Assembly (NCBI GenBank): GCA_023515725.1
Contig: JALDTO010000266.1
Location: forward strand, 1,403,580-1,467,579
Source: Amoeboaphelidium protococcarum X5
Lineage: Eukaryota > Fungi > Aphelidiomycota
Direction of reading: 5' to 3'
Length of the DNA stretch: 64,000 bases
The notes below the pieces were generated by a model that saw only the letters and a program-made list of their open reading frames with translations, made no database searches and had not been told where the DNA came from. Below, one piece after another: positions 2,847-63,245 of this stretch. The first letter of the stretch is position 1. Every line of letters begins with the position of its first letter. The position numbers were made by a program, and so were the translations under genes.

Positions 2847-3544
2847 TGATGCTGCATATACGCAAAGTCTTGCGCTGACATCTATTATCCTGAACCAGTC
2901 ATTTGAGTATACGGAAAGCCATCAATACCTTGCTGAGGATACTGAGCTAAAGGTATATGCATACCCCGTGATTAGATATCTCCTCCAGCCGACATAGCTT
3001 CGCGTTATAACTACTCTTATTATTACTGTTAGTGCAAACTCTACTGCTACTATAATAGCTATTGTTATTAAAGCTGCTATTGCTACTGAGGTGTCAGAGA
3101 CTGCGCGGTAACACTTCCCTTAGGATTGTGATGATTTTTTTACTGTTCCGCTGGATTAGAGGCTCTTGCCTGAGTTTATGCAGCAGCCTGAGGTGCTTTG
3201 CCATCCTACAAGAGAGTCTCAGGAGCAGGAGGTGTAGCAGGTGGTGAAGGAGTTGCAGGAGCAGGTGTTGGAACATAAACCACAATCTTATTTTCATTCT
3301 TATTGACTATTGGAGCAGGCGGAGGTGGTGGTGGAGGTGGAGGAGGAGGAGGAGGGGGCGGTGGAGGCGGAGGACCAACAAATAAATTCTTGAAAAAGTC
3401 AATAAATCCCCTTTTATATATTTGTACCTCTTACTGTTGACTATTACTGGGCTATAATCGCGACTATTAAATAGATGCCGAGTGGACTAATATCAAAGAC
3501 ACTGATAAGATCCAAATCGCTCTCCAAAGTAAAACCATCCGCAT
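2501..3544 (-). CDS. Secreted Pro/Gln-rich low-complexity protein (347 aa)
   Basis: Open under code 6 with no in-frame TGA. Begins MRMVLLWRAIWILSVSLILVHSA (signal-like), then a KR dibasic site, a poly-Pro run and poly-Gln runs built of TAA/TAG/CAA. Confidence 0.7.
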
Positions 3545-4555
3545 TTAAATCTATTTTATCTATATAAGTATATAATTCAATCTATGTCTTCCAAGCCTAT
3601 AATAATTCACCGTGATTACAAGGAAGAGCACAAGACAATGAACATCAATTGTGAAACATCTTCCGATCGAATCTTGACGCGAAACGCAAAAACGTGATTT
3701 TGAGAATCGTGACTGCTCGACGGTCATTGGATCAGAGGTTTCACGTTGCACTCAAATGCAACTGTGACATTGGGTAAATGATCATCCTTGCCAGCTGTGC
3801 ATAATGATTAGGAAAAAATGCTACGGATACTACAGAGTATGTAACAATGTACCAAGTTCAAGCTTTGGGGTCTATACAAAAGTATCTCTATAAAAGTGAC
3901 TAACAAAGATCGGCAGCTCTCTCGCTCTCTTGCATTAATCACTCGCTAAGACATTTATAGTCGAGTAACGATAACGATTCTATATCAATTTTTATGTAGA
4001 CGAGAAAAGTTGGCAATTATTACATTAGTCTAGCCAGCAACGTTCACAATCTCAAACTTGAAACTCATTACCAAACTTGACCCATTTGACGCTCATAAAA
4101 TAGATATAATCATAATTTTAAAGTAACGTGCATAACCAGTGAGCCCATCTTCAGTAAACCAAATTACTACTTTATTGGCTCTAAAGAAAACACATAATTA
4201 TACAGACCGTAATGAGTAATTCGTAACAATGATCATTACTAAATAATGCATAAAGCTTATCGGAAAATTCCAAATCAAGATCTGAAACAAACGCCACAAA
4301 GAACGTCCGATTAAATGCAGTGCAGTGAGCCGAGACGATGTGTGGCGTTCAAGAGATGAAGCGCGTCGATTCGTGAAAAGTTTCCGCGTTCCCATTTTCG
4401 ATCTTTGGTCTTTCTTCTTATTTGGTGCCGACGGGAAGCCGTATTGTTTATTGTCAAGTTTTAACTTTTTCTGTCAAGTTATAAACTCGGCTACTTCATC
4501 TTACATCTATACTCATACATTTAAGTTGTTAGCTTGTAAGTGTGGACGTGTTGAG

Positions 4556-7549: not shown

Positions 7550-7674
7550 AAGCATTAATTTTTTTCTCTTGTGAAAAATATAATATTGCTCGTCAGTTGC
7601 GTGTTTACTTAAGTGTTGGTATATATTACCACGAAAAGTATAAGTATATCTAAACTAGACAGTTGGAGAATTGC

Positions 7675-8879
7675 ACTATTCATTCATTCAAATTTTTCAT
7701 GTATCAAAAAATCATAGAAAGCATATCAGACAGTAACCAGTTCAGAACATCCTCTGCTGCTGGGCACTTCTTATGCCTTGAGATGATGATGATCCACCAC
7801 CACCCTGCTTCATGTGGAATAGAGAACGGTGGTCCTTGATAAAGTGGTCCAACTTTTCTGGCTCTTCACCAATCTTCTTCTTGGTGTCATCACTAACAAA
7901 GTTCAACTTTCCCTTATTCACCAAGTCGAATTCATCCAAAAGCTCACGTGTCAAAGTTTCTCTCAGACCCAACTGCTCTTGAAAGTAGCGCTGAATATGC
8001 TGTGGATCAACCTTCTAATACTGCAACTGCAAACCAACATTCTTATTCAGCACATCAACTAGCTGGCGAGGAGTTATGATGGTTGGACCAGACAGGCGAT
8101 ACATCTCCACATTGCCACTCTTAACCTTACGGCTCTCTTCACCCAGCACATCGTTGCAGATAAACTTGATCACATCGTGCATATTGATCATGGTGAACTT
8201 GGCATCTTCATTCAGCGGCCATTCCAGCTTGCTGCGCTCCATCATCATAAGACGGTGCAGGAACAGGGATTGCTGCAGACACACCAGACGGACAATACAG
8301 GCATCCTGGAAGCCGAACTCGCGCAGACACTTTTCCAAATTGCAGTAATTCTACGCAGTCTTGTTGTCTTGACCATCAATACCAGCTCGACTGATCAGCA
8401 TGACGCGTTGTGCCTGAGACTGGTGGGCAGCTTTCAGAATTAATTTGGTCTAGTCCACCATCTTGCCAGTTGCCCAGTCAGGTACTACGATCAGAGTATC
8501 GACACCGTCCAAATGCTTTCTCAACTATCCTTCATCTGGCTAGTCACCCATCTCAATCACACACGCACCTTTAGACCACAGCAGGCCACTACGCTCAGGA
8601 TGACGGACTGTGCACCATAACTCACTGATCTAGCCTCTAAACTTTTCATTGTCCAGCAGCTCGCACACCACGCCACAGCCCACAGCAGTATCAGCATTCG
8701 CCACAAAGACTCTTCTCATATTGCTCATTGCACGATTGGTTGTATATTCCAAATACTTTGATCAAGTAAAAGCAATAGAAGAGAAGGAGAATCAATGAGG
8801 ATAAGCAAAGTCTATCATATTGATGCCATCAATGATATGATGCCAAACCAGTTAGTTCCAAGTGGACAAATCAGGCAAT
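7675..8879. repeat. Left arm of ~1.2 kb inverted duplication (partner ~17250-18460)
   Basis: The reverse complement matches 17250-18460 almost base for base over the CDS and ~150 bp upstream; the 3' flank is partially similar. Confidence 0.93.
7742..8728 (-). CDS. NmrA-like / atypical SDR Rossmann-fold protein, copy 1 (328 aa)
   Basis: MSNMRRVFVANADTAVGCGVV...TVRHPE...LDGVDTLIVVP...YRLSGPTIITPRQLVDVL, a typical NmrA-like layout. Near-identical to the copy at 17398. Confidence 0.7.
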
Positions 8880-8998
8880 AAATTGATAATTCTAAAAGCG
8901 CCAAAAATTCTCTGATAAGACTTCATGATAACCAATATTTAAATTTATTTAGATTGCATCAGAAAGTCTACTCATTCAACTCTCATCACAGTTCACAT

Positions 8999-10315
8999 TC
9001 ATAGCAGAGACCGGTCGAACGCAATCAAAACGTATAGTTGCATGCGAAGTAGGCTCATCTTGGCATTAAATTCATTAATGAAATACGATCTTTATGATTC
9101 CAAAAGAGGATCTTGACCATTAAAAGTATACAAGTGCTTGTTCAGCTTTTTATCTCGTCGTGTCGCAATGTAATTTCTAACACCGTTCAGCTTCCACAAA
9201 CGAGGCAAAGATTCAGGTTAAAAACTCTACATATGAACGCGCAAAACCTTACTATAAGCCTCAAGATCCTTTCTGGATTAAGCTGCTGTCAGCACTTGTC
9301 CAATAATCAATGTTTTGTAACTGAACATCCGACGATTCCGCCTTGATCCAAACCACTGACTAGCCTAATCTGAAAAGTATTTTTGTACAGTAGCAAGGCC
9401 GCCACACTTGAGCACATCAACCAAGTCTTAGAAGGCAAACATCAGACAATTATGATCATCATACTATCGCCGCGCATTCAACACCAATAATTAATACCCA
9501 TTTTAGAATAAAGACTACATCACCAGTGGAATATGGGGCAACTAGTCCAATAGATATAAAGAATCACTGAGAAGAGCAATTTTCCTCTTGGTGTCAATGA
9601 CTAGTAAACTGTAATGAGTGGTGCCTGTATGTATAAAAAAGGCACGAGTCTTATAACCACTCTCAAGATGTTCACTATCATGGGATACTATTTCAGCCAA
9701 GTTGACACGCCAAAATTACAGAGTTTCCACAAAGATACTATCAACCTACTCCAGTATACGATTCTTGCGGGCGAAAGCTTTGTAGAATAACTAAAGATCC
9801 ATATCAGAGTATTTACTTAGATGAGGACTTTAGAATATTGATGTATCCCTATCAGTGAGAGCTTTTTGTGTACTCAGGTACACTTACTTTTGAACCCCGA
9901 CGCGAAAATTCGGATTAATAAGAGAGGCACGTAGAAGGCAAATAAAGATCTCCGATAGATCAAGCCCGTCCACATCAAAGGACGATCTCTTTACCTAAAG
10001 GTACTCTTCAACGCTCACAAGACATCTTTTTAAACCATCTGAAGATTTACGCTTCCCATTCTCATGCTCCTCCACCAATTATTAAGCAAAATGCACATAA
10101 TCTTTACTATACGCGAATTAGTGCAGCTCTTTTCGAAGCTGAGCACTGTAGAGTCTTTCAGACCGAGCAGAGTTCAAAGGCTTTCCTAACCATTTGATCA
10201 TCTATTAAGGATAAGAGGTGCGTAAGGCAACATCAGAGGAGCCAGCAACATCTGACAGCAGAATGACCACTACAAGCAACAAACGCGCGCACCAGTTCAA
10301 ATTAACCATTATCAT
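8999..10315 (-). CDS. Secreted CE-clan (Ulp1/SENP/YopJ-like) cysteine protease-like protein (438 aa)
   Basis: Absent from the ORF track; open under code 6. Signal-like MIMVNLNWCARLLLVVVILLSDVAG; catalytic-like motifs FFIHTGTTHYSLLVIDTKRKIALLSDSL and RQYDDHNCLMF. Confidence 0.7.
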
Positions 10316-10739
10316 GAATATAATAGCGTGAAATATAATTTCTGAACAAGCAGAGCATGAAATAAAATAATTTGTGGAAATTTAAATGAGAAAATTGGTC
10401 ATGACATGCGTTCATCCAAGCGTGATATTTAGTCGCGTGTTGATGGCACCTCGCATGACATCCCTCCGCCATGACTCGAGACAGGAGATTGTCCTCATGG
10501 TGATCGAACTTTGAATCTTATGCACTTTAAAATATTCTTCCCATACTCTTTACTTGAGAGCTGGTTCATAATTAGATCTTTAGTACTGAGTAGAGAGAGA
10601 GAGATCCCGTCGTCATGGATTCTCAATAATTGTGCTGATTGATGCTGGCTGCCTCCAATTCTAGAATAGATTTACCTTGTAAATATTTCATATACAACAA
10701 AACTTTTCTTACTACAAATAAGTCTATTATTTCATAAAA

Positions 10740-13046
10740 ATGGGATTGAAAAAAATAGTGAAGCAAAAGCTGTCTAGCAAGAAGTCGTTATCCAAGCCTG
10801 ATGCCAAAGAGATGGAAGTGGTTGAAGCCTAGCTGTTCTCTGGCATTCAAGTTGAATCTAGCAAGACTAAAGAGCCAACTAGTCCAGACTCTTCCGCTTC
10901 TGAAACATCTAATCAATCGGCTATCACTTAATCTACAGCCTCAAGTAGTAGTAGTAATGGTAGTGGCACCTCAGAGAAAAGTGTTATGGAAAAAGATGGT
11001 GGGGCGGTTGCTTTAAATAGAATTCCAAGTGGGTTTGCATCAATGTCTGGATCTTCTGATGGATCTTCAGTGTCATCGCCGTCTAGTGCTTCAGATAATG
11101 ATTCGCGTGGCAAATCGTCCAAACGATTGGCAAAGTCCAATAACAAAACACCTACTCCAGTAGTGATTAAAGATTAGAATATGTCCAGTGCATCTACTTA
11201 ATCATCGCCATCCGATGGTAGTGATATATCGTCGTCCTCCGCTGCCTCAGATGCACAATCTAGCTAAAAAGACACAGGAACTAAATCAAAAGCTTATCAA
11301 ATAAAATCTCCATTGTCAGAGGTTTCATCGTCGAAGAGTTAAGCAGATTCTTCGAGCAGCAATCAGAGCAGCGCTGTGTCCCATGCTAATGAAGAAGATG
11401 ATGAAAACGAGTCGCTGCATAGCAAGATTGAGAAACTCAAGGTGAAAGGGTCTAGCGATTATACAGCGAGTGCATCAGAGGCATCCCAGGTTACGGTTGC
11501 AGATGATGATTAAGAATGGTCTCCTGTTAAAAGTAAGCGTACTCTGAAGGCAGAGAGACGATCTCAAAGGTCTCAGCAGTCTTCCGTCGCGTCCTCTCCA
11601 GTCACATCTAGTGTAAGTAGCAAAGGTATCAAGTCAAATGGAAAAGATACGAAAGCTAGGTAAACAAGTTCTTCAACCAAGAGAGTGGTCCAAGCATCGT
11701 CGAATCTGCCTTCAGGAAGCAGCGATGGAAGTAGTGGCAGTAGTAATCAAAGCAGTCGCAGCTCAGAGATCAGCAAGTAGAGCCGAAGAGTGGAAAGTAA
11801 AGTCACTGCATCTTCAGTAGATAGTCCTTTTAGCTCGTCATCTGGCTCACAAAGTCAGTCATCTGATAGTGAGATATCAAAGGCCAGAGCTAATGCGAAA
11901 TCAAAGAATCAAACCGCAGGAAATGGTATCTCTCCTCAGACCAGGTAGAATAAGAATAACAGAATAGAGTAGTGGCGCTAGACTTTAACAACGGAAGAGT
12001 TTGGAGCGGCGGCTGTGTCTGGTATGGTAGCCGATTCCGAAGATTAACCTCTCATGAATATGTACAGCTCTAGTAAACCTAAAGTCGTCTAAAGTCCTAT
12101 TATGGGTGCGAACTACTAGCAGAGTGGAGCTGCTTAACCACCCATGATGCCTCCCGCTATGAACAACTACACTCAGGCTTAGAATTAACAGTTTTAGCAA
12201 ATGTAAGCAGGCCCATACGCTCTCCCTTAGTATGCTTAATAGTTGGGCGCATACGGAAATGGTGGAGGCCAATTTGGTCCTGGGGCTGCCGCGTTCTCTA
12301 GACACTCTGGCTCATCGCCCTCAGTCGGATCCGCATTTGATGATCTGACGCCGTTTGATTCCATTAGTAACGGACCTGATCGCCGTGGTGGGTATCCACC
12401 AATGTAATAATAAGGTCCTGTAATGCCGCAAAATATGATGAATACATAATAGTTCGCGTTGTAGTAACAGTAAATGATGGCTTAGTATGCTATGGGTGCT
12501 GGAAACCAGTTTATGGTCAATCGTAATGTTTAGAACATGTAGGCCCAGCATCTTCCTTACAATTATGGAAACCAGCAGCTGCTTCAGGCTTAGATGATGT
12601 AATAGTAGCAAATGCAGTATGGAATGGCTTAAAGGCCGGCTATGATGCTGAATCCATAATTTCAGTAGTAGGTAGCGATGCGGCCGCCTCAGCGATAACA
12701 GTCTGGACCGATAAGGCCCGCTTGGTTGGATGATGAGGAACCAGCTATTGGTGGATAGAATACTTTGATGGAGCAGGTGAAGAAGGGCCGAGCGTAACCA
12801 TAAACGAGTGGAAAGAATCTGGTAGCATAGATCAAGTATGATAAAAATACTGGCCAAGTTCCCACCCTTTAAAAGAGTACACCTGCACAACTCGGTCAAT
12901 AGTATCTCCAATAACAATAGTACATGATGATGCTCTCTCAGTAATAGCAGTAGTAGCAGCCAGGATATCCTTAAAATCTACAGATGCCTCAGTACTAGAC
13001 CAACTTTGATGATGATGAACCATTGAGCAATTTGAAGCCTCGTTGA
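10740..13046 (+). CDS. Uncharacterised Ser-rich then Gln/Met/Pro-rich disordered protein (~768 aa)
   Basis: ATG10740 (MGLKKIVKQKLSSKK) to TGA13044 in one frame under code 6 (middle only spot-checked); includes ORF-track fragment 10986-11177; C-terminal DDEEPAIG and DDDEPLSNL motifs. Confidence 0.7.
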
Positions 13047-13207
13047 TTTTTGATTAGAGTAATAAAGTTACCGTCAGCTATAATGTACAGTGCCTATATT
13101 CCTCTTGCTATGATACGCTTTAAAGTAGGAGAACGTAGTAGTAAAAATTCAATCAATATGACAAGCAACTATATTTATTCAAATCAAATCAACCTCAAAA
13201 TATTTAT

Positions 13208-47187: not shown

Positions 47188-47569
47188 TGATGTGTACAAT
47201 TCTTTGTATTTAAAAATAAAAATTGATACGAAAACTTTTACAGTCTTCTTCCATTTTCTTGAATTACTCTAACAACATGTTGAAGGACGCCGACTCTCAC
47301 AACTCTTCATTTAAAGATCGTGATCAGGAGCGAGATTAGTCGAAAGCGCCAACAAGCCCCTGAACATGCAGCACAGAAATGAAATAGAGGCGCAGTGGGG
47401 CAATATTTTCGCATTGCCGCGTATTCCATTCACCTTCCTTAACGGTAAACTCGCGCGTTATTCATCCTTGTTCAGTGGCTATTATCTGATTTTCAATATA
47501 CCTTACGGCTGCTGTAAATAACACTAATAGAATTTCCGTTGAAATTATAGATAAATCATCATCACTAAT

Positions 47570-49045
47570 ATGAGCGAAAGTACCACTAATATTCCCAAGG
47601 GAATTACACGTCAGGATGTATAGAATAGCCTGATGGCGTAGAATGAAATGCTAAAAGTGGCGTCTAAATATTATCGCAAAGTGCTGGAGATGAGCTAGAC
47701 TAGTCTGGAGTTTGCTAACAGTCTCGATGATGTGTCCAAATGCAAAGGAGCTGAATAAAGCGGCGTCGGTCTGAATAGCGCTGCTGAGTTGCACAGGCTT
47801 ATCGCGAAGCACTAGGAGCAGTTGGCTGAGCTCATCCATAAAGAATATGAGGTCCCGCTGCAGCGTAATCTTGCCACTCATACGAAGCGTATTGAGGAGA
47901 ATGATCGTCAATTTGAGAAGACCATGAAGAAGATGCAGGATGACATTAGCAAGACTGAGAATAAGATGCTGAAGGGAAGGAAGAAGGATCTGGCCGTATT
48001 CCAATAGTCCCTTAAAGACATGCAGCGTCAGGCTGAGGAGCTGGAGCAGATTAGAGAGCAAAACAACACGCGTGTCCTATAGGAAGAGTAGAGGCATTTC
48101 ATGTTCCTTGTGTAGAAGGCTGCCGGTGTGGTAAAGAGCGAGTATGATCATTACTCTGCGCTGGCACTGCTCAGTAGAGATGTCACCGAGGAGATTATTG
48201 GTATTGCATTCGCTCCACCTGGCAAGACTTTGGACCAGGCAGAGAAGCGGCGCGTCGTTGAGAAGTTCTTGGGCTCTAGTATCAGTGTCACTGGCAGTCC
48301 TCAGCTTCAGCATAGAGATTCTATGAGCAGCATTGGAAATACTATTAGCAGTGGAGGCAACAATTATAATGGTGGGTTTGGTGATGACGCTGAGTCTCGT
48401 AGAGTCAGTCAGAGCTCATCTGTTGTCGGTCAGGTTATCCATCATTATATCAAATCCCCTCAAGGAACTGGTCCCGCCGGTCAACTGCCGACTGTTGGTG
48501 GTAATAGCGCTAACTCTGCAGCACGACCTGCAACTCCTCCAACCACTCCATAGCCACTGAATACAAGACGCTCATCCAATAGCACTGCAGAAAAGGCCGC
48601 TGCAAGACGATTGAGTTCCGGTCAAATGAGTCCGCTGATCCAAGATTCACTGAAAAAGTTGAACTTGGCTGCATCTAATGTAGGTGCTTCCTAGTAGTAG
48701 TAATCTATAGAGAGTGGACAGCCTGCATCGACGCAGTAGAAAGTTGCGCGTGCAGAATCCAACTCATCATCATCTGTTGCTAAATTGACTAAAGTTGTAG
48801 AAGAAGAATCTGCTGCTGCTGGTGCCGGTGCTGCCGTCTCTACTAAGAAGACTGATCTTGATCTGGTTGTTGCTATTCATGACTTTGCGGCTAGAAGTGA
48901 ACGTGAATTGTCCTTTGGAAAGGGCGACGTATTGCTGGTAAAGTAGAGAAATGATAATTGGCTGTACGCTACTCATCATCCTGCTCAGGTTGGTGCCAAG
49001 AGCGGCTGGATCCCGGTCAGTTATACCAACAGTCATTAAGGTTGA
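47570..49045 (+). CDS. I-BAR/IMD (Ivy1-like) domain + C-terminal SH3 protein (491 aa)
   Basis: Helical N-terminus ITRQDV...ASKYYRKVLEMSQTSLEFANSLDDVSKCKGA...RKKDLAVFQQSL; SH3 VVAIHDFAARSERELSFGKGD...W..GWIPVSY. Confidence 0.75.
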
Positions 49046-49397
49046 GAGAGTAACAGAGGAAGATGAGATAGTATGTTTGAATTGAATAAAAGTAGACTTA
49101 GTTAATAGCTTTTATTATTATCTTATCCTCTTAATGTTTAAGATCTTGAACATGATTTAATACAAAGAGCTAGTTTAATTGCGCATATTGCAGTCCAATC
49201 AACGCTGCCGTTGTGACTTGGTCATAATAATAGACCATCAATCAATGGTGTAAGCGGTGGTATTCCCACGTCTTCTCTGCACTTAAATCGATAGTGTTAG
49301 CATTTATAAGTAGCAGAAAATAGTTTATAGACTTTACTAAATACGCGTAAATATATTAATTGAAATTACAGACCTCTCAAGTGACCATCCACAAGTA

Positions 49398-50248
49398 ATG
49401 AATCAAAACTGTGCAAAGTGTAACAAGATTGTCTACCCAACAGACAAGATTCAAGCTAATAACCAGTCTTTTCACAAACTGTGCTTCAAGGTATGATATT
49501 GTACTGCACAGAAGATATGATAACAATATGATTATATTTATTGTAGTGCAATGAGTGTGGATTAACGTTAAACTTGAAGAATTTTCAGTCGTTCAACTAG
49601 ACGCCTTACTGCAAGGCTCATCTGCCTAAGCACAGTGCTACCGTTGTGGCTGATACTCCGGAGAATAATCGTATCAGAAATGTGGCCTAGATGGTCAGCA
49701 ATGTGCAGTACAGAGCTGATTATGAGAAGATGAAAGGTGATGCTGGTGGATTTGGTCAGGCTGCTCTAGAGGCGCCCGAGATTAAGAATTCAATGAAGGC
49801 TGCCCAGTAGATCAGTCAGGTCAGGTACACGCACATAGCTCATGATGGCCCAACTAATTCGGCTTAATCCAACAACAGCGTTCACTCTGCCAATAGATCT
49901 ATTGCTAGTGCATCACCAGCTGTATCCAATGCAATGATCAACTAGTACAGCGCACCTGCACCTGTAGCTGTAGCTGCCGGAGTTGAAGTTTAGTAGTAAT
50001 AGCAAGCTGTAAGAGCAAGTTAGCAGTAATTGGCACCGGAAGATGTTCAAGCTTCTGCGTAAAACATTGCTGCCATGCTTTACAAGGCTTCTTTCGCGTA
50101 CCACCCTGATGCTGATGATGAGCTGTCCTTCGATGTCGGTGACAGCATTGTGGACGCACAAATCGTAGCCGAGGGATGGTTGTACGGCACGAATCAGCGC
50201 ACCGGTAAAGCGGGTCTTGTCCCAGAGCCATACGTGCAGAAAGTCTGA
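49398..50248 (+). CDS. LASP1: LASP1-like LIM-nebulin-SH3 protein (intron 49491-49546)
   Basis: MNQNCAKCNKIVYPTDK...FHKLCFK|CNECGLTLNLKNF...YCKAH LIM; nebulin repeats VADTPENNRIRNVAQMVSNVQYRADYEKMKG and APEIKNSMKAAQQISQVRY; SH3 DELSFDVGD...EGWLYGTNQRTGKAGLVPEPYV. Confidence 0.88.
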
Positions 50249-50967
50249 ACTGATCATTCATTTTTTTCATTGCACGCATTGGTTTGCTGGGCTGTTGATG
50301 AGTGTTGATCGTATCGGAAGCGTGTATTTTTTGGTACTTGAATGATGTTTCTCAATTGAAATGACTAAAATAGATTTGTCTCTTTGTTTCATGGTGATTT
50401 CTTCTTGCACACTGCATAAATGATGATGGTCCCTTCATTCTATGAAAGACTCTGACGGTGAAAGCTGGAGCGGTAAAATTTCTCCCTAGAATATAGTTTC
50501 AGATTAGCTTCTCTTCGCCCAGAACTTTTTCAGTATTGAAAGTGTCGATACACCCACAGTAGTTGCTGATATAATCTCGATTCATCGCGGACCAAGAGGA
50601 TGGATTTACGAAACGCAAAAACATCTTCAGTAGAGAGACTTTGCACAGAAGGAGATCTCAAGTCCAATCGCCTGGAAACGTTTCACCGTTGAAACAATTC
50701 AACTCTATCGATTGTTTGTTTGATTTCAAAAGTGCCCAGACTGTAGAAGCCACGTTCTCTTATTATTCTTTCACACAGCACTTGAATTGAACTGACTGGA
50801 CTGACTGAGAAACTATCTTCACGCTCTCTTTCCCAGGCGACGTTAAGTTATTCTGAGACTAATATCAACAAAGTTTGTTTCAACTTGGTAATTAGTATTC
50901 ATCGTAGTTGCCTTAATATACATCAATCATATTGTAAAGTCAAAGTAAAGTCAGATTAAAATCAACT

Positions 50968-53917
50968 ATGGCCAGCAAGCAGATTGTGAATAAAGCTCCG
51001 TAAGAAGCCGGATTGTATCTGGTTCCCCTGGTTTACACTGGACAAGGAGACGTTCTAGTTCCCACACATCAAGTATCTTGCCAAGCTAACGGTATGTATC
51101 ATATTTTTTCATGTTTTCTATATCATATCTTCTATTGCTGTTTATGCCTCTTTCGTTTATGAATGTGTAGTAATTAATCTCCTCTGCCATAATCAAGTAA
51201 CGTAAACTTTCAAGGTGAGTGCGATTTAGAATGCAGCAGACATTGTTGGGGATGTTGAAGCCATCTATCGTTTGCCACTTGTCGATAGAGCTCTCATTAA
51301 CGGGCTGGAAATTAACATTGATGGAAGGAATATCACAACTTCCATCTCTGATACTGACACCGGTAACAATCAAGAGGATATGATTGCCTAGATGGACAAG
51401 CCCAAGCGTGAATTGTTGCAGATCAATATGGGTCAACTGAAGTCCAACTCTATCGTTACCGTATCTATCTCTATGCTATATGAGCTAAAGAATTATAACC
51501 AGCAATGTGTCAATTACGTTATACCTACCCATTTGATTGGAAAGGACTGGAAGGAGGACCATAAGGTTTCTTTCAAGGCCAGTATTCATTTCTAGATGCT
51601 GTCTCAGATTAAGAATATTGTTTCATCCGTACCAGATGCGTAAATTGAACTGAATTGTGCCAGAGATGCTAATAAGCGCGTAGTAAAGGAGGAAGATAAG
51701 GCTAGACATGCACAAGTGAACGTCGATTTGAAGTTGTCTAAGGAAGACTTGTCATCTGAGCACACTCTGTCCATCTTTACTGCAAAGTGGGGCTAGTCTA
51801 TGGCTATTACTGAATTCAATCCCAAGACTAAAACTTACTGCACCATGTTGGATTTGTGCCCATAATTCAAACAGGGAGAAGGTGAGATGAAGTGTGACTT
51901 CGTAATTTGTTTTGATATGACTTCCCAGATGGTTGGTGGCAAGGCATATAGAATGAAATAAGCAATTCAGGTGTTGTTGAAGTCGCTACCTGAAGACTGT
52001 TTCTTCAACCTAATTGGCTTCGGTGCTGGCTGTGCTGCCATGTAGCCGTATAAGAGCTTAATCAATGGCCCTGATGCTCAGGAAATGGCCACTGCTTTCT
52101 TGGATGGAATACAGCCAGACATGGGTGCTAAACGTGATTTAGAAGTGTTTAAGAATGCTTTTACTGAAATCAAATTATAGCCTAATTATCGCCGCCAAAT
52201 TTTTGTGATTACTGGTGGAGAATTTGAGAAGGCTGATGAAGTGCTCAAGTATGTTCGTAGCTAGTCTAATGGTGGTAGAGGAAGATTGTTTTGTGTTGGC
52301 ATTGGTAAAGCGTCAAATCCGGCGTTCTTGGAGAAGTTGGGCTCTTATGGAAGTGGCGAAGCATACTTTGTCAATTCTCAGGATAGGTTGGAGCTGAAGA
52401 TGTTGGCCATGTTGAAGAAGGCTATGCAACACGGCGCACGTAATTTCAGAGTACGCTGGGTTGACAACAAGGTGTTTTAGTCTGCCGCGCCATCCACTCC
52501 CGAGAGTGCCAGTACGAAGAGTAAAGATGGATCTACGAAGACTTTCGGTATGAAGGACTTGTTTACTGTGGATGAAGCTGATGTGGCCAAATAAGAGTCT
52601 TTCAAATTTGACGAACACGTTCTATGTCAGACCCCAGCTGATATTCATTCTCTGTACGTTGGTAAGAGAACTTCGGTGTTTGCGTTCACCAAGTTACCTG
52701 CTCAGCTACTGAAGGAACTATTTCTGTCTGCTGCCTCCACGGAAGGCCCATAAGACTTTACGGCTGAGGTTGTGAGCTCCGTCATGATTGTCGGTGAGAA
52801 TGATGTGCCAATCATTCATACTATGGCTGCAAAGCGCTTGATCAATGATTTGGAAGACAATCGCTCCTACTTTCATATTGGTCTTCCTTTCCATCCGACG
52901 CTGGAGGCTAAGAAGAGATCTCCATCTCAAGTTGATGCGAAAGACATCTCTGCAACTATTGTCAAGCTAGGCAAGGAGTACAGTTTAATGACATCAAAGA
53001 CTTCGCTGATTGCCACGAATGAGTTTGGAGAGTAGTTGAAGAAGACAGATCTGAGCATTAATTGGATCATTCCAAGTCATCGCGCGGCTAATGCTAAGGC
53101 TTTAAGTCCACGTGGTCAGACTCCGAGTCCGTCACCAACGAAGTCTTCACTGAGCGACAAAAAGGATTCAAGTTCCGGTGATGTTAAAGGATTAGGATCT
53201 CGCAGCAGTCGCACCAGTTTATTCTCGTTTAAGCGCAAAGATTTGGGCAAGACTCCAGCCAATGCTCCTGCACCTAGTGCTGACTCTGGTAAAGGATCTT
53301 CATTAGCTCCGGGAAGCAATCAGTCGTTTGTAGAGTCTCACATTTCCTAGGGATCAGATGGTGGAGCAAAGATGTCCTAACTCTCTAGTGATCATTACGG
53401 CAATACCTCCGCCTCCATGTCCAGAATCTCAGCTGATGGAGAAGGAACAGCTACGGAGGCTTCCAATTTTCAGGAACCGCCAGCGAATGACAAGTATTCA
53501 ATTATAGTGTCTCTGCTGCGTTTCCAACAGGCTGATGGCTCTTTTGTGTGGAAGAATGAACTGGTTGATCAATTGTCTTTACTGCCTCAAGCAGTCGGCC
53601 AACAACAATAGTTGGACTAAATTTAAGCCTCTCTAGCTGAGGATGATAAGAGTACAATATATCGCAACGATATTTCAGGAAAGGTGAATAGCGGTAAGTC
53701 TCAGGTAATTCTGGATCCTAATGCTGAAGAATAGCAAGCAGTGTGGGCCACGCTTCTGGTGCTGGCTTATTTTGAAATTCATCTGCCAAGTGAACGTGAC
53801 ATTATTGCATAGAGTGAAAAGAAGGCCAACAAGTGGTTGGACTAGCCTCAGTAACTTGGCTATTTGAGCGTTTCTAAAGATCAGGCTGTCGATGCTGCAA
53901 GATCCGTCTATGCGTGA
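50968..53917 (+). CDS. VIT + vWA domain protein (VWA5A/LOH11CR2A-like); intron ~51092-51170
   Basis: VIT-like N-terminus; vWA FVICFDMTSQM...LLKSLPEDCFFNLIGFG...IFVITGG...FCVGIG; IIHTMAAKRLINDLE; YSLMTSKTSLIA; LLRFQQADGSF. Confidence 0.8.
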
Positions 53918-54380: not shown

Positions 54381-56933
54381 ATGACAGTGTTTAATAAGGC
54401 TTTAACCTGTGCATGGCTGTTAACCGTTTCCTAGTTTACTCGTGCTGCTGTGCCTGTCATTGGTGGCGGGTCAACATTTCAGACTGATATTCAGATCATC
54501 TTTAATGATTATTATGCTTTCTCTTTGAATTCCACGGGTGTGGTGAGTTACAATTCTACTGGAAGTTCAGCGGGACTTAGTTAGACTATTGCTGGACTGT
54601 ACATGTTTGGTGGTTCTGATTTCCGTCCTCCCGTTGGTTCAACTGTGCAGGCTATCCCTATCTACGCTGGTGGTGTGTCTGTGGTTTACAACGTCCCTGA
54701 GTTGTAATCTGCAAATATAAACTTGAGGCTATCTCGCAGTGCTCTGGTTGGTATTTTTAGTGGTCAGGTCAAAAAATGGAATGATCCTTTGATTGTGGCT
54801 GCTAATCCTTTGGCGACCTCTATACTGCCTAATTAGAACATCACAATCGTTCGTCGTTCTGATGGTAGTGGTACGACTTTTGCCTTCACATCAGGTCTAT
54901 CATCAGTCGATAGTACAACATGGGTATATGGTGGAAACACAGTGTTCAACTGGACTTGGGCATAGAATATTGCCGCTGCTGGTAGTTCTGGTGTGGCTAA
55001 GAATGTTCTCGGATTGAGGTACAGTATTGGATATGTCGATTCTTACATTGCCACTGATTATCAGATCTAGTCGGCCTCCATATAGAACAAGAAGCTGGAA
55101 TACATTGAGCCGTCCTCTCAGTCCATTAATGCTGGCTTTCAGCGTATCTAAGGCGCCAATTTCGATATCCAAGACTTTATTGATGTGGATGAGACTGGTG
55201 CGTACCCGTTTGTTGTGTTTACGTACAATCTTTTGAATGATAATATGAAGCAATTCTTCTCTATCACTCAGGTGCGTGAGACGTTGAAGTATCTGTATTG
55301 GTGTTTGACTGATAACTTTGCCACCAACTCTCTGCTTGCCAATACTCTGATTCCTGTCCAATAGAATATTAGAGATGTTAATTTGAATTTGCTCAAGACG
55401 TACAAGTATGGTGATGTTTAAGTCTTTGGTTAATCTCCGTGTGACGCTCCCAACTAGTGCAAGAATGGTGGTTAGTGCAGTGTTATCTACCCGTTCACTG
55501 ATCCTGTGGTGAAGTGCAAGTGTAATGCTTTGTTCACCAATGTCATTAATAGCGATTGTTCAGAGCTCTCTCCAGGAGAATTTGTCGATCTTCCTTAATT
55601 ACCTGCAGTCTTGATGACCATATTCGCTCTGGCTGGCATTTTGTACACCATAGTCATGGGTCTCATGCTGGTCACCAGAGCTGATCATCCTGTGGTGAAA
55701 GCCATGAGCCCATTCTTTTGCTTCTGGATTCTCGCTGGCTGTATTTTGAGTTATGTCTCTGTGTTCCTGTTCATCGGAGAGCCTAACAATTTTACTTGTG
55801 GTGCACGTCCTTGGTTCCTCTCGACTGCATTTGGTGCCGTGTTTGGTATGCTTGCTGCAAAGACGTGGCGTATTTACTCCATTTTTGGTAATGTTAAGCG
55901 TATGGAGGAGAGTCTTACCAACTTGAATCTGTTCATTCGCTTCGGAGGTGTCGTGCTGAGCAGTGAATGGCTATTGGCGATCATCTGGTCCGGTGCGGGT
56001 ATCTTGTAGCCTTACAACACATTCGCTGAGAACGGACTTAGCGTGGCTAGAACTTGTGCGTCTCTGAATGGAGATTTGTAGACGGCCATGTCTGTCTTAT
56101 TTTATCTCTCTAATGCAGCCTTGTTGGCGTTCTGCATTTATCTTGCTTACAAGACGCGTAGTTATCAGTATCAGTACAATGAGAATCGTGAAATATCTCT
56201 AACATTGTCCTTGATCACGTTCCAACTGGTGATTGGTATCCCTTTGACGTATGTTGTCGCTTTGGATCATGAAGCTGTTTTTGTCATTACAGCTGTGACT
56301 CTCACCCTGGTGCCGTTCACTGTGACTACAGTCATGTTTGGACCAAAGTTTTACAGCCTTTACTTGGCCAAGTTCTTCAAGAAGGAGGGCGCTTATGATA
56401 TTGGAAAGTCTACGTTTGGTGCTAGTGCTACAAATGCCTCCACTGCAACTGGAGGTGCAGCAGTGAGAAAGAGTACCGAAATTCTGCCATCTGGACTGTC
56501 TTTCTGGCATTGCAGTCTGAAGCGTAATCGTATCGGTTCTCCGTGGTTTATGTGCACCATTGCCATTGTACCGGAGATTAATTGGATTGCGTTTGTCGAC
56601 GATTGGGCCAATTCCTCCCCAAAAGTGTACGAAGTCTTCAAGTTTACCGATGTGAGTTTCTCTGATCAAGTGCCGAAAGGTCAGGACCCTGAGACAAGTA
56701 CACTGCTGAAAGTGGGCGCTGTTGAATACATCATGGAAGTGAAGACTAAAGAGTACATGGCAAAGTTCAATAAAGTCTTATCTAAAGTTTAGCACGGCGC
56801 TGAAGCCAATGTCAAGATTAAGAATACTGCCACTGGTGAGAGTGTCAAGCAGCCAGCAACTATTGATCGATCGGCCAAGATTGATAGAACTGCAACTGAG
56901 AAAAAGATGATTATTGAGTAGGATAAACTATGA
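54381..56933 (+). CDS. Class C-type GPCR with PstS-like phosphate-binding ectodomain, EGF-like module and PH-like tail; paralog A (850 aa)
   Basis: Signal peptide; PstS motifs GGGSTF, TGSSAG, FGGSD, WNDPLI, RRSDGSGTT, SIGYV, YPF; EGF C..C.NGG.C..C.C..C; class C 7TM motifs HPVVKAMSP, KTWRIYSIF, AYKTR..YNE, FGPKF. Confidence 0.85.
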
Positions 56934-57189
56934 TGATGTATTAGGTCGCACTATGATACATAAAGGATGATAATAATTGATTACAGGTTTATAATAAAGT
57001 TTAAAGTTGATGATGATATCTGTCTCTTTTAATGTACTGTATGAACAAAAATGAAACTTCAACACATGGAAATCCTATTGCATCAAAATCTAAACTTTAT
57101 CAACCTTTATTACCAATTTCATCAAGTAAACCAAATTCTTTCACCTCAGTCATTATTAATTTCATAGCGGGTTGATACATTCATGTTGT

Positions 57190-58872
57190 TCAATCAGCCA
57201 AAATAGACTTTATCTCGGCAGACTGCATGAATCTGGGGTAACTAGCCTTTTGCATCAGCTGGAAAATGTGGTCATACGCATCACGCAGAACATTAATGTC
57301 AAGAGATGTTGGATTGGCCTCTGCGGTCTTAATGTCAGCCAGGATTGTATCACGCGTACCTGCTAGCAAATTCAACTCATTAGGACTTCCAATGGCGACA
57401 AAGTTGTAACAAATCTCTTTACACTTTATGAAATACTCCGTGCGGTCCATAATAGACTCCAGCTCTTGACAAGCTAAGTAGAACTTCAAGTTCTCAGTTG
57501 AGTAATCCTTCTCCAAGAAGGTCATGAACCACTTCAATCCAAGAGGATCCTGTAGAACATCACGCAACCCCAAATTCCACATACGCGCATGACTGAAAGA
57601 AGGAGTATCTGGCACAGGTACCTCGACATACTTCTCCGTCTCAGACTTATCCCATGGGTTGTTCTTGTGCAAGTCAGAGCGAACCAGCGGATCAAATCTA
57701 GAGTACATGTCAATACGCGTAATAAGATTCTTGACCGCCGTGGAGGTTGGCAGACGATAGATGTTCAGACAGGCAGTAAGATTCTCCACCTACTTCTTAA
57801 GATAAGCCTCCACTTTGGCTTCATCTTTCAACTTCTTCTCATACTTCTCCGGGCTATAGCGGTGCTTCTTGATCTTGGTGATTGGCGTCTCCTCAATGTA
57901 AAGGCGACTGGCTTTCAGCGGTCTCTGCACCTTCCAGAAGGCAGCTTCACGCAATTCAAATAGCTTCTTCTCACCACGATCCAGCCTGCTAAAGTGAGCC
58001 TTCTGCTTGTCCTTCATCTCTCTGATGAGATCTTATTTGAACTCAACAGCCTGTCCCAGGGTGGCAAGGCGCTCCTTCTCCTCCGAGTTCAAGTTGGATT
58101 TACGCTTCAAGTACAGGTAGTAATCCAGATCAGAAGTGTCCCAGAAACGACTAGGATAAAAGAAGTCAGCCTGGTACGTGTACAAGGAGTCATCTTCACG
58201 ATACACCTGCTGACTATCATCGACCGGGATGATGTAGCCGTTGTCAGTCATGTTTTAGATGATCAACTTGGCATCAGCCGGGTTCAGAGCATTCAGCTCC
58301 TTCAAGAACCACACGGCAATATCATAACCAGTAGCGCACAGTGGCTGAACATTAAGCAGTCCTTTGATGTCCTTAAAGTGGACACCATCCACGGGATCGC
58401 GCAACTTACGCAGCAACTTTTCGTAACGCTCAAAGCGGGCCTTGACAGCGAAAGATTACCAGCGAGGCGCCACAGACAGCAGCTTTGATTAAAGCAATGC
58501 CAGCTTGTAGTCCTTCTCCTCAACATAAATCTCCTTCTTACCCGAGACTGTAGTGTTGATAGATGTACCCGCATTTTTGCTATTCAACGACTCACTCGAT
58601 ATGCTGATCCTACTGCCTTTGGTACCAGAGAAAGCCTTACTGATGATGGAGGTCTGCCTGTTATTCTTGGATACGATGGACATGTTGTCATCAACGATGG
58701 TACTATCTCTTGTGGTTGATGTAATGATATCTCCACCAAGAGATGGTTATGGCGATATACCAGAGCTGGCAGCAGATGCAGTCTTCTTGCGATAGTAAGA
58801 TTGCTCCTATTGTTTCATAGCCAGCTTCTTCAGTGCAGCCTTAGTCTCTTACAAATCTTCGGTATCACTCAT
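57190..58872 (-). CDS. R7-family-like RGS protein (DEP-DHEX-GGL-RGS, 560 aa)
   Basis: DEP (CATGYDIAVWF...NGYIIPV), DHEX (ELREAAFWKVQRP), GGL (YSRFDPLV...NNPW), RGS (WNLGLRDVLQDPLGLKWFMTFLEKDYSTENLKFYLAC...LMQKASYPRF). Confidence 0.88.
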
Positions 58873-59397
58873 TTTAGTATTGATTGTATTGCTAGTGGGT
58901 TTTAAAAACAATAAATTTAAATTTGGTCAGTATAAATAATTAACAGATTATACACCAACTTTAAATGAGAGGAAGGCTGTATAAGCGTTGCCTAGTTCAG
59001 TCAGTGGCGAGTAAAAGTTTCATGATGAAGCCATAAACAATAGCCAGTAAATGGTTTGGTATAAAAATAAACTCTGATGGAAACCTCACCAAGTTCCCAC
59101 AGTTTATGCCGGTAACTATGTAGGATAAACTCGGTTCTTAGATGCAATACTATATGTATTATTATCTGGGGGCCACTAATGCGTGCGTACATTAAAATCC
59201 ATACAGTGTGTTACATGTGTTACCATATAACACGATTCCGTACTATACTATTTAGTCTCGGTATATTTTGGCAGAGGGGGCAACTGATTACGCAAAAGTC
59301 AGCTGTCAACAGGCCAACCTGAAACGAATCTAAACTATGACGTATCTATCATTTTTAAAGCACCAAGATACCGTTTACAAGATGGAAATATGCATAA

Positions 59398-60619
59398 TAG
59401 TCCGTTTGAACAACATGTCAAAACCTCAAAAAGTATTATTAACCAAAGCTTATTAACGTTCAAAGAAAATGACTCCCGGTGAAATCGAGGTCATAGAACG
59501 TCTTAAAGCTAAGGATTATGGCTATACAGTTATGGCCGACGCTGTAGGCCGGTCTGAAGCCTCTATCCGTTATTGCTTTAGCCGCAAAGCAGCATCTTAG
59601 CGACTTCCCCCCCCCCCAAAGAAACGATTAGAAATCCGAATAGAGGACGTCGAATTAGTACTATTTCGAAGTTGGCTGCAGCCAGAAGTCCGCGTTCTTC
59701 AGTTAGATCGTTGAGAGGAAAGCTTGCGTAGGAAGTCGGTACTGATTAGCCTCTGCCGAGCACAACAAGCATATATAGGCGCCTCAAATCATCTGGGATA
59801 GCAAAAAGAGTCTGTCCGAAGAAACCTGCAATAGCTTTGGTGAATTAAAGTCGTCGAGTTGCGTGGTGTAAGCTAATGAAAGAGGCGCTTCGGAAGGACC
59901 CAAATTTGATCAAACGTTTGATCATATCTGACGAGTCCACCGAACGTCAATTTCCAGTGCGAGGCAAAGTTATGGCTTGGGCACTCTCTAAACTTGCTAG
60001 AAAGAAGCTTCCCATAAATCCCCAACGTCAGTAGGGTGGTATATCAGTGATGTTCTTCGGCTCCATGAGTTGGCATGGATTTGGACCCTTGATTCCTCTG
60101 GAGGGCAACCAAAATGGATAATCCTATATAAAAACTATTGATAATGCGGTAATTCCCTATATTAAAAAGTTGAGAAAAGATCATGGTGTAAGACCAGTTT
60201 TTCAGCAAGATAATGCACGCTGTCATACCGCGAAAATTGTGTAAGAGCACTTCAAAACGCAGCGCGTGACGCTTCTCTAGGATGAGCTCGGACCTGACGG
60301 AAAATGGCCTGCATCTAGTCCTGGCCTGTCCCCGATTGAAAATGCATGGGCTCATGTGAAGAGATTGCGTCGTGAGAGGTATCCTACGCCAAAAACCAGA
60401 GAAGAGCTCATAAATCAGTTCACCGCTGTATGGGAAGGTTTGACGGTATAATACGCTCGTAAGCTCATGGAATCACTTCCAAATCGTATAGAAGAGCGTA
60501 TTAAAGCTAAAGGACAGACGATTGATTATTGATATCTTATTTTTTGACGAAATTGTGACTATAATATTGATTGATTTGATCGCTCGCTTTCGTTTGTGAC
60601 AAAAAAGTGAAACGGACTG
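59398..60619 (+). mobile_element. Tc1/mariner (IS630-Tc1) DNA transposon with degenerate TIRs
   Basis: Left end tAGTCCGTTT...TGTCA; the right end reverse-complements to TA|CAGTCCGTTT...TGTCA; contains a transposase. Confidence 0.8.
59416..60532 (+). pseudogene. Tc1-like transposase with one frameshift (~59607-59640)
   Basis: HTH (MADAVGRSEASIR) lies in one frame. SIYRRLK, KKPAI...RRVAWCK, IISDES, FQQDNARCHTA and WPASSPGLSPIENAW lie in another frame, with a C11 tract at the junction. Confidence 0.8.
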
Positions 60620-60701
60620 TATCATCATAATTTATAACCACTTTATATCATCTTTTATTTAAATCTTCCACACCATCTTAATTAATGTAACCCTTAAAAA
60701 A

Positions 60702-63245
60702 TCAATTGTCGTCCACAACGCTGGAACTGATGGATGACGATGCCTTGGTAGCAACGGCCTTGTTCAACTCCAAAGCAGTCTGCTGAATACGCGGGAAAAA
60801 CTTTTTGAATCTAGCCATCATATCCTTGTTCTTACTCTCCAGTGAATACTCACCGGTTGGGTGCTTGATTACACAACTCTCAGGCGTGTCACCATCAGCC
60901 AACTAACACTCGGTCAATTTCAAAGACTCGTACACTTTCAACTGGGAGCTGGTCATATCTTCAACGGCGGCGAACCAGTTCAACTCTGGAATCACAAAAA
61001 TCACAGCTTACAACCATGCAGCACCTAAACGCTTCTTACGGATGGAAAACTGCCAGAAACTCAAACCAGACTGACTGACATCACCAAAATTCTTATTACC
61101 TGAATTCTCAGCCGTGGCTGTACGAGCAAAAATGGAGTTGGACATATCATAGGCCAAACTCTTTCTGAAGAAGCGGGCAAAATACAACTCATAAACCTTG
61201 GAGCCAAACATGATCGACGTGATGAAGAGTGGGCACAAGATAAGCAGCAAGCACGTAAGAATATTAATGGAGTTGTAATCCAGCGATGGCAAGTACACTA
61301 GCGGCAGACCTACAAGCAGTGGCAGAATGGTGGTATAGATGGCGAAGGAGATCGACTTGGACTCATTAAACTTTTCACCAGCATATCTAGTCTGAAATGC
61401 GACATAAATACATGCACAAAGCAAGATTGCGTTAAATACGTACAACAAAGCACTCATAGTGGACGCGACGGTAGCATTGCCAGAGACACAAGTCTTCACG
61501 ACAAAATTGGACGCATTCAGCACCACGGTTGGCTTCAAAGGTGATGCGGCCACCCAGATGATGCTCAACAACAACTCGAGACCACAAATGACTGATCCGA
61601 AACGCAGCAATAGACTTGCATCAGATAATGATTAATTCACACGACGCAGATTACCAAAAATAGTGTACACACGATAATTCTTCGCAGTCATCATACCAAA
61701 CACCAAGCCAAATGCAATGGACAACCAAAATGGACGCGCATTACACATAAAATCGTTTGGCTCACCCAAGAATAAGAAAACTCCTGTATAACTAATGGTA
61801 CAACCACCCAGAATCAGTAAACTAAAGGTTGGTGAAATGGCCTTGATCAATGGGTGATTTCTACGGAACACCAACATCATAGCAACCACACCATTATATA
61901 TAATTCCGGATATGGCAAGAAACAGTAGGAAACCATTAATCGGCTCCTGGTAAGTAATAAACAGGGACGGCGTTAATTCGCTACAATCATTATTAAGATT
62001 ATTGGTGTACAACTTTGGACAGCTACATCTTATAGTAGCCGGAATGAATGGACTCGTCTTTACGGGACACACACCACCATTCTGGCACAGGCCATCAAAA
62101 TCACAGACAGAGGTGCCATACAATGGTTTGGAATCACTGTACACAAACTACTGTAGTGTTGAGATAGCATTCTGCAAGTTGGCACTATCCAGCTGCACGT
62201 AAGAGAATCTAGAGATAACACGCTAAGCATACGTATCAGTGTAGGTCCAGTAAATGTAACGCATAACAGATCTAAACTGATCAACGTTATAGTATCTAGA
62301 GACATTCTTATTCAGAGCATAGAACGTGAACGTGGTGATAGGATACGAGCCACTGGCAGTAGAATCAACATTACCGAGCGTCTCATAGTTACCCTGAGCA
62401 GCGGCCAGAGCAATCTGAGCAGAAGTCTAGTTGGCCACAGTAAGCTCATTCTGTCTGTTATAAAGACGAGCGTAATCAATCTACTTTGTCGCAGCATCAG
62501 CCAAATCAAGATATCCAACAGAGTAAGCATTACCAATGATGTTCTAAACCACACCGATGGAACCAGCACCACGAGCAAAAGGTGTCAAACCAGCATTGCC
62601 CCAATTAGGAAGACCATTCACACCAACTTTACTGCTCCACTCCGGAGACACCTTGGTCAGAAACTGAGTGAAAGCCGTTGTAGTTCCAGAACTATCATTA
62701 CGCACAATGACTTTGATATCCTGATTGACACTAGAAAGACTAGGATTGTTTGCCACTAAAGCAGGATCATTCCATCTAATTATTGTGCCATTAAATATCT
62801 TCACAACAGTCATGCGGTCCATGATGAGGGAACAACTCTGAGAGGAACATCCAATATCAGGCACATTATAAGTAATGACGATTGCAGAACCAAAGGTGGG
62901 TAGAGTGACAAAAGAGTTGGCAAACTCAGGTGCAATAACAGATGGCAGAGCATCAGTACTACCCCAAGCAGCACCACCATTCGCAGCTGTTCTCACACCA
63001 GATCCGGAACCAACTGCAGAATACTGAATAGAAGTGTTGGCATAACTAAAAGGTAAACTGTTATATGACAGAGCCCAATCAAACTAAACTTGAGCCTGCA
63101 GCGTAGATCCAGCGCCTTAAAGACCTACACAATACTCATTTAAAGGTTATTCGAAACAGCTATCTTATAAAATGTTCTATCAAAACTTACTTGCTTATAT
63201 AAGAGTTGCATACAATGCGGCAAAAGCAAAGTTTGTTAGTATCAT
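60702..63245 (-). CDS. Class C-type GPCR with PstS-like ectodomain, EGF-like module and PH-like tail; paralog B (intron 63190-63125)
   Basis: MILTNFAFAALYATLIQA|SLQGAGSTL, SAVGSGSG, WGSTD, WNDPAL, VRNDSSGTT, SVGYL; CQNGGVC EGF; HPLIKAISP, KNYRVYTIF, FQTR...FNESKSI, FGSKV. Confidence 0.85.

What the first reader, a model, noticed from the sequence alone, without database searches (positions are those of the whole stretch)
54381..63245. Candidate 'metabotropic phosphate receptor' system: two PstS-EGF-class C GPCRs flanking an R7-RGS gene
Seen: two convergent paralogous receptors (54381-56933 +, 60702-63245 -), each built as signal peptide / PstS-like binding domain / EGF-like module / class C 7TM / cytosolic tail, with a DEP-DHEX-GGL-RGS gene between them. 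Known: animal class C GPCRs usually carry a type I Venus flytrap domain, whereas PstS is a type II periplasmic binding fold. Animal GPR158/GPR179 (ligand domain + EGF-like + class C 7TM) dock R7-RGS/Gbeta5 directly and signal through it. Inference: this locus encodes an analogous receptor-RGS module that senses extracellular phosphate (or a phospho-ligand), for example for host finding by an algal parasitoid's zoospores. I know of no characterised PstS-GPCR, but have not searched.
Basis: partly seen in the sequence, partly recalled or inferred. Interest (0 to 1): 0.95.

Follow-up and report, generated by a model that had tools for sequence, protein, structure and literature searches.

The report
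Phosphate-binding GPCR pair with PH tails
An algal parasite related to fungi makes two cell-surface signalling receptors whose outer part is a bacterial phosphate-catching protein with its pocket intact, so they probably sense outside phosphate; the regulator gene between them is probably a neighbour, not a proven docking partner.

Summary
Observation confirmed. The genome is Amoeboaphelidium protococcarum (TAA/TAG = Gln). R1 (54381-56933 +) and R2 (60702-63245 -, one intron) are PstS / EGF-like / class C 7TM proteins, the only class C GPCRs found. All nine PstS phosphate-contact positions are kept, and both genes are under strong purifying selection. New here: the 'cytosolic tail' holds a PH-fold domain (Z 12.8), shared across the family. 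The family also occurs in chytrids, Blastocladiomycota and Mucoromycota. The gene between the receptors is an R7-like RGS, but the GPR158 analogy fails its tests: no post-TM7 coiled coil in the R1 model, no Gbeta5, and a 7TM closest to mGlu2/GABA-B2. No RGS lies beside the receptor in nine fungal loci. In a second aphelid the R2 ortholog's 3' neighbour is a LASP-like gene. Best reading: phosphate-gated class C receptors signalling through ordinary G proteins. Binding and signalling are untested. Type II binding-protein/7tm_3 fusions are published (even PBP_like_2, as 'transporters'); I found no paper on phosphate sensing or the PH tail. The scan noted the receptor pair before on the duplicate copy.

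The parts
54381..56933 (+). Receptor R1, 850 aa, intronless: signal peptide, PstS domain, EGF-like module, class C 7TM, linker, PH domain
54450..55415 (+). R1 PstS domain with T32, F33, S62, D80, R159, D161, S163, G164, T165 (E. coli PstS T10, F11, S38, D56, R135, D137, S139, G140, T141)
55440..55559 (+). R1 six-cysteine EGF-like linker (C354-C393)
   Evidence: Pfam EGF in homolog P0010
55599..56378 (+). R1 class C (7tm_3) seven-helix domain
56487..56825 (+).
   Evidence: (Z 12.8, rmsd 2.5, 94 aligned)
57190..58872 (-). R7-like RGS gene, 560 aa: Ser-rich N-terminus, DEP (faint), DHEX, GGL, RGS box; Ala in place of a conserved Asp near the RGS box C-terminus
59398..60619 (+). Tc1/mariner-like DNA transposon (ORF 59558-60532, D-D-42-E spacing, imperfect terminal inverted repeats); insertion seen only in this copy
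60702..63124 (-). Receptor R2 exon 2: PstS (about 63122-62136), EGF-like (62105-61983), 7TM (61943-61176), PH-like domain (61070-60756)
63125..63190 (-). 66-nt GT-AG intron of R2, containing an in-frame TGA (inferred from sequence and the sister-strain model, not from reads)
63191..63245 (-). R2 exon 1, encoding the signal peptide

Best explanation
R1 and R2 are plasma-membrane class C GPCRs whose ligand domain is a domesticated prokaryotic PstS. Shown: the architecture, the intact phosphate pocket, purifying selection, and retention of both paralogs in a second aphelid. Inferred: outside orthophosphate closes the two PstS lobes, and the disulfide-braced EGF-like stalk passes the movement to the 7TM dimer (R1/R2 heterodimer or homodimers). 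The dimer then switches an ordinary heterotrimeric G protein; the genome has about five Galpha, one Gbeta and one Ggamma per gene set. The PH domain probably binds Gbeta-gamma or phosphoinositides as a built-in feedback or localisation module. The R7-like RGS belongs to the same general G-protein toolkit and may act on this pathway, but it does not dock as RGS7 does on GPR158, and its position here is lineage-specific. A likely use is to tell phosphate-poor water from phosphate leaking from, or inside, an algal host.
For: All nine contact positions align with PstS structures; Foldseek TM 0.85-0.88 to PstS. dN/dS between the two copies is 0.044, 0.022 and 0.055 at dS about 0.22. Both paralogs have 57%-identical orthologs in run SRR9661224, and the duplication is aphelid-specific. 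Family members across chytrids, Mucoromycota and Paraphysoderma mostly keep S38, D56, R135 and SGT. Most chytrid members lose D137, which PDB mutants show is compatible with bound phosphate. Class C motifs in TM3, ICL3/TM6 and TM7 are present. G-protein subunits are present. PH fold shown. Contigs of one run cover the three genes separately and leave the intergenic DNA uncovered, as transcripts would (run kind unrecorded).
Against: No binding, signalling, dimer or stage-expression data. An intact pocket does not fix the ligand or the direction of the signal. The RGS adjacency is unlikely by pure chance (about 0.2-0.5%, post hoc). R1's ICL3 motif has Tyr where R2 and mGlu2 have Phe. The PH function is assumed from fold only.
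Confidence: 0.55

Rival explanations
1. The true ligand is a phospho-compound or another oxyanion (polyphosphate, a phosphate ester, a phosphorylated algal wall glycan), or phosphate is a constitutively bound cofactor and the signal is something else.
For: Chytrid members vary at the T10 and D137 positions, and some lose R135. Paraphysoderma carries an expanded tandem set, which suggests ligand diversification. Dictyostelium GrlD is a putative polyphosphate receptor (PMC10445921).
Against: R1 and R2 keep the complete E. coli-type set, including D56 and the R135-D137 pair. PstS pockets bury the ion and exclude larger esters (established knowledge).
Confidence: 0.2
2. One reading: a GPR158-like module in which the receptors dock the neighbouring R7-RGS and signal by tuning its GAP activity, using the single Gbeta in place of Gbeta5.
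For: The only class C GPCRs found flank one of three R7-like RGS genes (chance about 0.2% for R7, 0.5% for any RGS, post hoc). The order is kept in both genome copies and the sister strain. EGF-like stalk as in GPR158. This RGS differs from its paralogs at a conserved Asp, which may mark a specialised role.
Against: No Gbeta5. No post-TM7 coiled coil in the R1 model and no VCPWE-like motif. GPR158 is absent from the top 60 PDB matches. No RGS within 10 kb in nine fungal loci, and R2's 3' neighbour in a second aphelid is the LASP-like gene. The copies that share the order are only about 8% diverged and are not independent.
Confidence: 0.12
3. Functional gene cluster without docking: the RGS is the dedicated GAP of this receptor pathway and is kept nearby for co-regulation.
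For: Low chance of adjacency. RGS and R2 lie on the same strand. All three genes are covered by separate contigs in one run.
Against: A transposon sits between RGS and R2 in this copy. R2-RGS adjacency is missing in the second aphelid. The other R7-like pair has no receptor beside it.
Confidence: 0.1
4. The proteins are phosphate scavengers or transport accessories, as 7tm3-PBP fusions were interpreted in Plasmodiophora.
For: PMC4815078 proposed this for PBP_like_2/SBP-7tm3 fusions.
Against: The membrane part is a class C GPCR fold with signalling motifs and a PH tail, not a permease.
Confidence: 0.03

Closest known systems
Class C GPCRs with type II periplasmic-binding ectodomains in early-diverging fungi and protists (PMC3251606; PMC5168858; PMC4815078)
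   Same: 7tm_3 fused to a prokaryote-type type II binding domain; EGF-like modules seen in gut-fungal members; PBP_like_2 plus 7tm3 listed in Plasmodiophora.
   Different: In the passages I read, none is identified as PstS with an intact phosphate site or linked to phosphate sensing, and none mentions a PH tail. A 2026 review lists fungal 7tm_3 receptors as uncharacterised (PMC13308352).
Bacterial and archaeal PstS
   Same: Same fold (TM 0.85-0.88) and all nine phosphate-contact positions.
   Different: Fused to a GPCR, with no ABC permease role. The receptor domains form one group apart from the sampled prokaryotic PstS.
GPR158/GPR179 with RGS7-Gbeta5 (PMC8611064)
   Same: Non-flytrap ligand domain, EGF-like stalk, class C 7TM; an R7-type RGS is present in the genome.
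   Different: PstS rather than a PAS/Cache domain; PH domain rather than the RGS-docking coiled coil; no Gbeta5; 7TM closer to mGlu2 and GABA-B2.
Calcium-sensing receptor (phosphate as partial antagonist, PMC10102455) and Dictyostelium GrlD (putative polyphosphate receptor)
   Same: Class C receptors that respond to phosphate species.
   Different: They use flytrap or BMP-type domains, and phosphate is a modulator of CaSR. Here a dedicated phosphate-binding protein is the ligand domain.
R7 RGS family (RGS6/7/9/11; RGS7-like genes reported in chytrids, PMC3971589)
   Same: DEP-DHEX-GGL-RGS order; best PDB match RGS7.
   Different: Must pair with a Gbeta1-type subunit, if any; Ala replaces a conserved Asp in the RGS box; one of three paralogs.

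Membership tests
Class C GPCR | 7tm_3 domain over curated cut-off; seven helices | tested here: met
Class C GPCR | Large extracellular ligand domain after a signal peptide | tested here: met
Class C GPCR | Type I Venus flytrap plus nine-cysteine domain (animal type) | tested here: not met
   type II PstS and a six-Cys EGF-like module instead
Class C GPCR | Dimerisation and G-protein activation | not testable with these tools
   motifs present; no multimer modelling or assay available
PstS | Type II PBP fold | tested here: met
PstS | Phosphate contacts T10, F11, S38, D56, R135, D137, S139, G140, T141 | tested here: met
   R1 identical at all nine; R2 has Leu at the backbone-contact position 11
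PstS | Measured selective phosphate binding | not testable with these tools
   needs ITC
GPR158/GPR179-type RGS-docking receptor | Cytoplasmic coiled coil about 40-95 residues after TM7 that binds DHEX | tested here: not met
   R1 model: disordered 670-701, then PH fold 703-815; R2 not modelled, tail homologous to R1's
GPR158/GPR179-type RGS-docking receptor | Gbeta5 partner | tested here: not met
   single Gbeta gene, Gbeta1-like
GPR158/GPR179-type RGS-docking receptor | PAS/Cache ectodomain and GPR158-like 7TM | tested here: not met
GPR158/GPR179-type RGS-docking receptor | EGF-like linker | tested here: met
   (by cysteine pattern)
GPR158/GPR179-type RGS-docking receptor | Physical receptor-RGS complex | not testable with these tools
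   no multimer prediction or assay
R7 RGS | DEP-DHEX-GGL-RGS order | tested here: met
   (DEP only faint)
R7 RGS | Intact GAP surface | tested here: inconclusive
   EN and Asn motifs kept; Asp to Ala before the YPRF motif
Conserved receptor-RGS gene module | Linkage kept in independent lineages | tested here: not met
   0 of 9 fungal loci; R2-RGS adjacency absent in a second aphelid; R1 flank there not testable
PH domain superfamily | Seven-strand sandwich closed by a C-terminal helix | tested here: met
   Pfam PH over cut-off in related receptor P0093

The most novel reading that the evidence does not exclude
A dedicated extracellular phosphate receptor family of aphelids and early fungi, built from a captured PstS and carrying its own PH module. 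In aphelids it works as an R1/R2 heterodimer whose PH domain or loops recruit the adjacent R7-like RGS with a conventional Gbeta, an independent origin of RGS-docking class C signalling used in host sensing.
Probability: 0.1. Interest if true: 0.9.

Novelty: new variant of a known kind. Interest (0 to 1): 0.62.

Why it matters
How eukaryotic cells sense outside phosphate directly is largely open. The known cases are transporters acting as sensors or receptors merely modulated by phosphate. This family gives a concrete candidate with a predictable pocket, so one binding assay and one signalling assay can test it, and it is spread over aphelids, chytrids and Mucoromycota. A PH domain built into a GPCR tail is a further unusual feature of non-animal class C receptors. 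A working PstS-gated GPCR would also be a ready scaffold for phosphate biosensors and could bear on how algal parasites recognise hosts in mass cultures.

Tried and rejected
Word-index protein searches with a junction piece and with a family alignment found almost nothing; the exhaustive search found the family. Sequence searches of the R1 tail alone did not reveal PH; structure did. The top Gbeta PDB hit 9mzg is a duplicated Gbeta1 construct, not a fungal protein. The C316 copy and the sister-strain locus were rejected as independent synteny evidence (92% DNA identity for C316; 98% protein identity for the sister-strain R1). Bacterial contamination or an assembly chimera was rejected: table 6 code throughout, continuous frames, homologs in many fungi. 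Paper searches found nothing on PstS-GPCRs or Amoeboaphelidium GPCRs; the library is incomplete.
Full report
Source and code. Long reading frames in the window exist only when TAA and TAG are read as Gln. The closest proteins are annotated Amoeboaphelidium protococcarum, an aphelid parasite of algae. The genome is 23.6 Mb and holds most genes twice; the second copy of this locus is on contig C316 at about 92% DNA identity.

Observation. R1 is an intronless 850-aa frame at 54381-56933 (+). R2 starts at 63245 (-), has a 66-nt GT-AG intron with an in-frame TGA, and ends at 60702; the implied 825 aa matches the sister-strain annotation. They are 36.6% identical over 797 aa. PF00003 and PF12849 each give exactly four matches in the genome, these two genes and their C316 copies, so they are the only class C GPCRs detected. 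A six-cysteine EGF-like module joins the two domains. The gene between them (57190-58872, -) has DEP (faint), DHEX, GGL and RGS domains, and RGS7 is its best solved relative. All three genes are under strong purifying selection between the two copies: dN/dS 0.044, 0.022 and 0.055 at dS about 0.22. In one public run three separate contig sets cover the three genes and skip the intergenic DNA, as transcripts would, but the run's kind is not on record.

Ligand domain. The R1 ectodomain aligns to E. coli-type PstS (E 5e-31) and superposes on PstS structures at TM 0.85-0.88. The positions known from PstS crystallography (own knowledge) are T10, F11, S38, D56, R135, D137, S139, G140 and T141. R1 keeps all nine; R2 keeps them with Leu at the backbone-contact position 11. 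Chytrid homologs mostly keep S38, D56, R135 and SGT but lose D137; PDB entries of D137 mutants still hold phosphate. Phosphate is therefore the best ligand guess, but binding is inferred, not shown.

A missed part. The tail is not unstructured. After a disordered linker (670-701) the model shows seven strands and a long helix, matching PH domains at Z up to 12.8 over about 100 residues. The domain is conserved in chytrid and Mucoromycota members and in class C receptors with other ectodomains, one of which passes the Pfam PH cut-off. R2 has a homologous tail. I found no paper describing PH-tailed class C GPCRs.

Family range and history. The PstS-EGF-7TM architecture occurs in many chytrids and in Calcarisporiella and Jimgerdemannia; Paraphysoderma, another algal parasite, has a tandem set of PstS and 7tm_3 genes. 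The ESM Atlas has a chytrid cluster at 0.98 and weaker clusters in amoebae and other protists. In the 7TM tree R1 and R2 each pair with an ortholog from a second table-6 organism (run SRR9661224, about 57% identity), and the duplication is aphelid-specific (95/91). The receptor PstS domains fall on one side of a branch against the prokaryotic PstS sampled (SH-aLRT 99). That fits one old acquisition, but the prokaryotic sample is small and length-biased, so no donor is named.

Is the RGS part of the system? For: with roughly 5,400 genes per set, three R7-like genes and about eight RGS genes, the chance of one lying in the three slots around the receptor pair is about 0.2% and 0.5%; this is a post hoc figure. 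Against: nine receptor loci from eight fungal genomes have no called RGS gene within 10 kb, and a six-frame scan of eight of them found none. In SRR9661224 the R2 ortholog lies tail to tail with the ortholog of the window's LASP-like gene (49532-50248; SH3 85% identical), so the block VWA-R1-RGS is not between them there. The R1 contig of that run is too short to test R1-RGS linkage, which stays open. The two other R7-like genes have no receptor beside them. GPR158 docks RGS7 through a cytoplasmic coiled coil and works with Gbeta5 (PMC8611064). Here that stretch is a PH domain in the R1 model, there is no VCPWE-like motif, the genome has one Gbeta1-type subunit and no Gbeta5, and the 7TM is closest to mGlu2 and GABA-B2. 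RGS7-like genes in chytrids and a holozoan origin of Gbeta5 are published (PMC3971589). This RGS has Ala where RGS7 and its own paralogs have Asp before the YPRF motif; that Asp contacts Galpha in RGS4 (own knowledge), so its GAP strength may differ.

Mechanism. Most likely (0.55): phosphate closes the PstS lobes, the EGF-like stalk transmits the change to a receptor dimer, and a conventional heterotrimer is switched (subunits present), with the PH domain binding Gbeta-gamma or lipid. Every step after the architecture is inference. Long retention of two paralogs suggests either a heterodimer, as in GABA-B, or two affinities. Rivals: another phospho-ligand or a cofactor role (0.2), GPR158-like docking (0.12), a co-regulated cluster without docking (0.1), transport (0.03).

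Novelty. Class C receptors with type II binding domains are published for chytrids and gut fungi (PMC3251606, PMC5168858), and PBP_like_2 fused to 7tm3 was listed in Plasmodiophora as a putative transporter (PMC4815078). Fungal 7tm_3 receptors remain uncharacterised (PMC13308352). What is new is the identification of an intact PstS pocket, the family-wide PstS-EGF-7TM-PH design, and a testable candidate for a dedicated outside-phosphate receptor.

Steps left out. R2's two exons were not joined for any search or fold, and frames with TAA/TAG were searched as separate pieces or through deposited protein records (P0153 for R1). R2 and the RGS were therefore not modelled, and no complex could be predicted.

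Noticed in passing
window 59398-60619: Tc1/mariner-like transposon with 42 residues between the second Asp and the Glu, imperfect terminal repeats; absent from the C316 copy, the sister strain and a biofilm metagenome contig.
   Followed up: partly
G000:C137:67273-72008 (L016, L020) and C181: Tandem pair of further R7-like RGS genes with no receptor beside them; both keep the RGS-box Asp that the window's RGS lacks.
   Followed up: partly
L040 (G000:C200:421612-422613): Only one Gbeta gene (Gbeta1-like) for three GGL-type RGS proteins and one Ggamma, so GGL domains here would have to pair with a conventional Gbeta.
   Followed up: partly
P0034, P0093, P0066, P0100, P0091: Class C receptors with other ectodomains (cysteine-rich, flytrap) also carry a PH-like tail, so PH-tailed class C GPCRs are a wider group.
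   Followed up: partly
L065 (Paraphysoderma, 3286-22229): Tandem array of about four PstS/7tm_3 receptor genes in an unrelated algal parasite, several split in the annotation.
   Followed up: no
L015 and L050 (run SRR9661224): A second organism using TAA/TAG as Gln, 48-51% GC, about 57% protein identity: a more distant aphelid with both receptor orthologs.
   Followed up: partly
L054 6013-7773; L056 113-2235: An arrestin-like gene lies next to the Spizellomyces receptor, and a PhoD-type gene 8 kb from a Rhizoclosmatium receptor; single cases, probably chance.
   Followed up: no
window 47543-53917: IMD-SH3, LIM-nebulin-SH3 (LASP-like) and VIT-VWA genes precede R1; a Pex13-like and a RhoGAP gene follow R2 in the sister strain.
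   Followed up: partly
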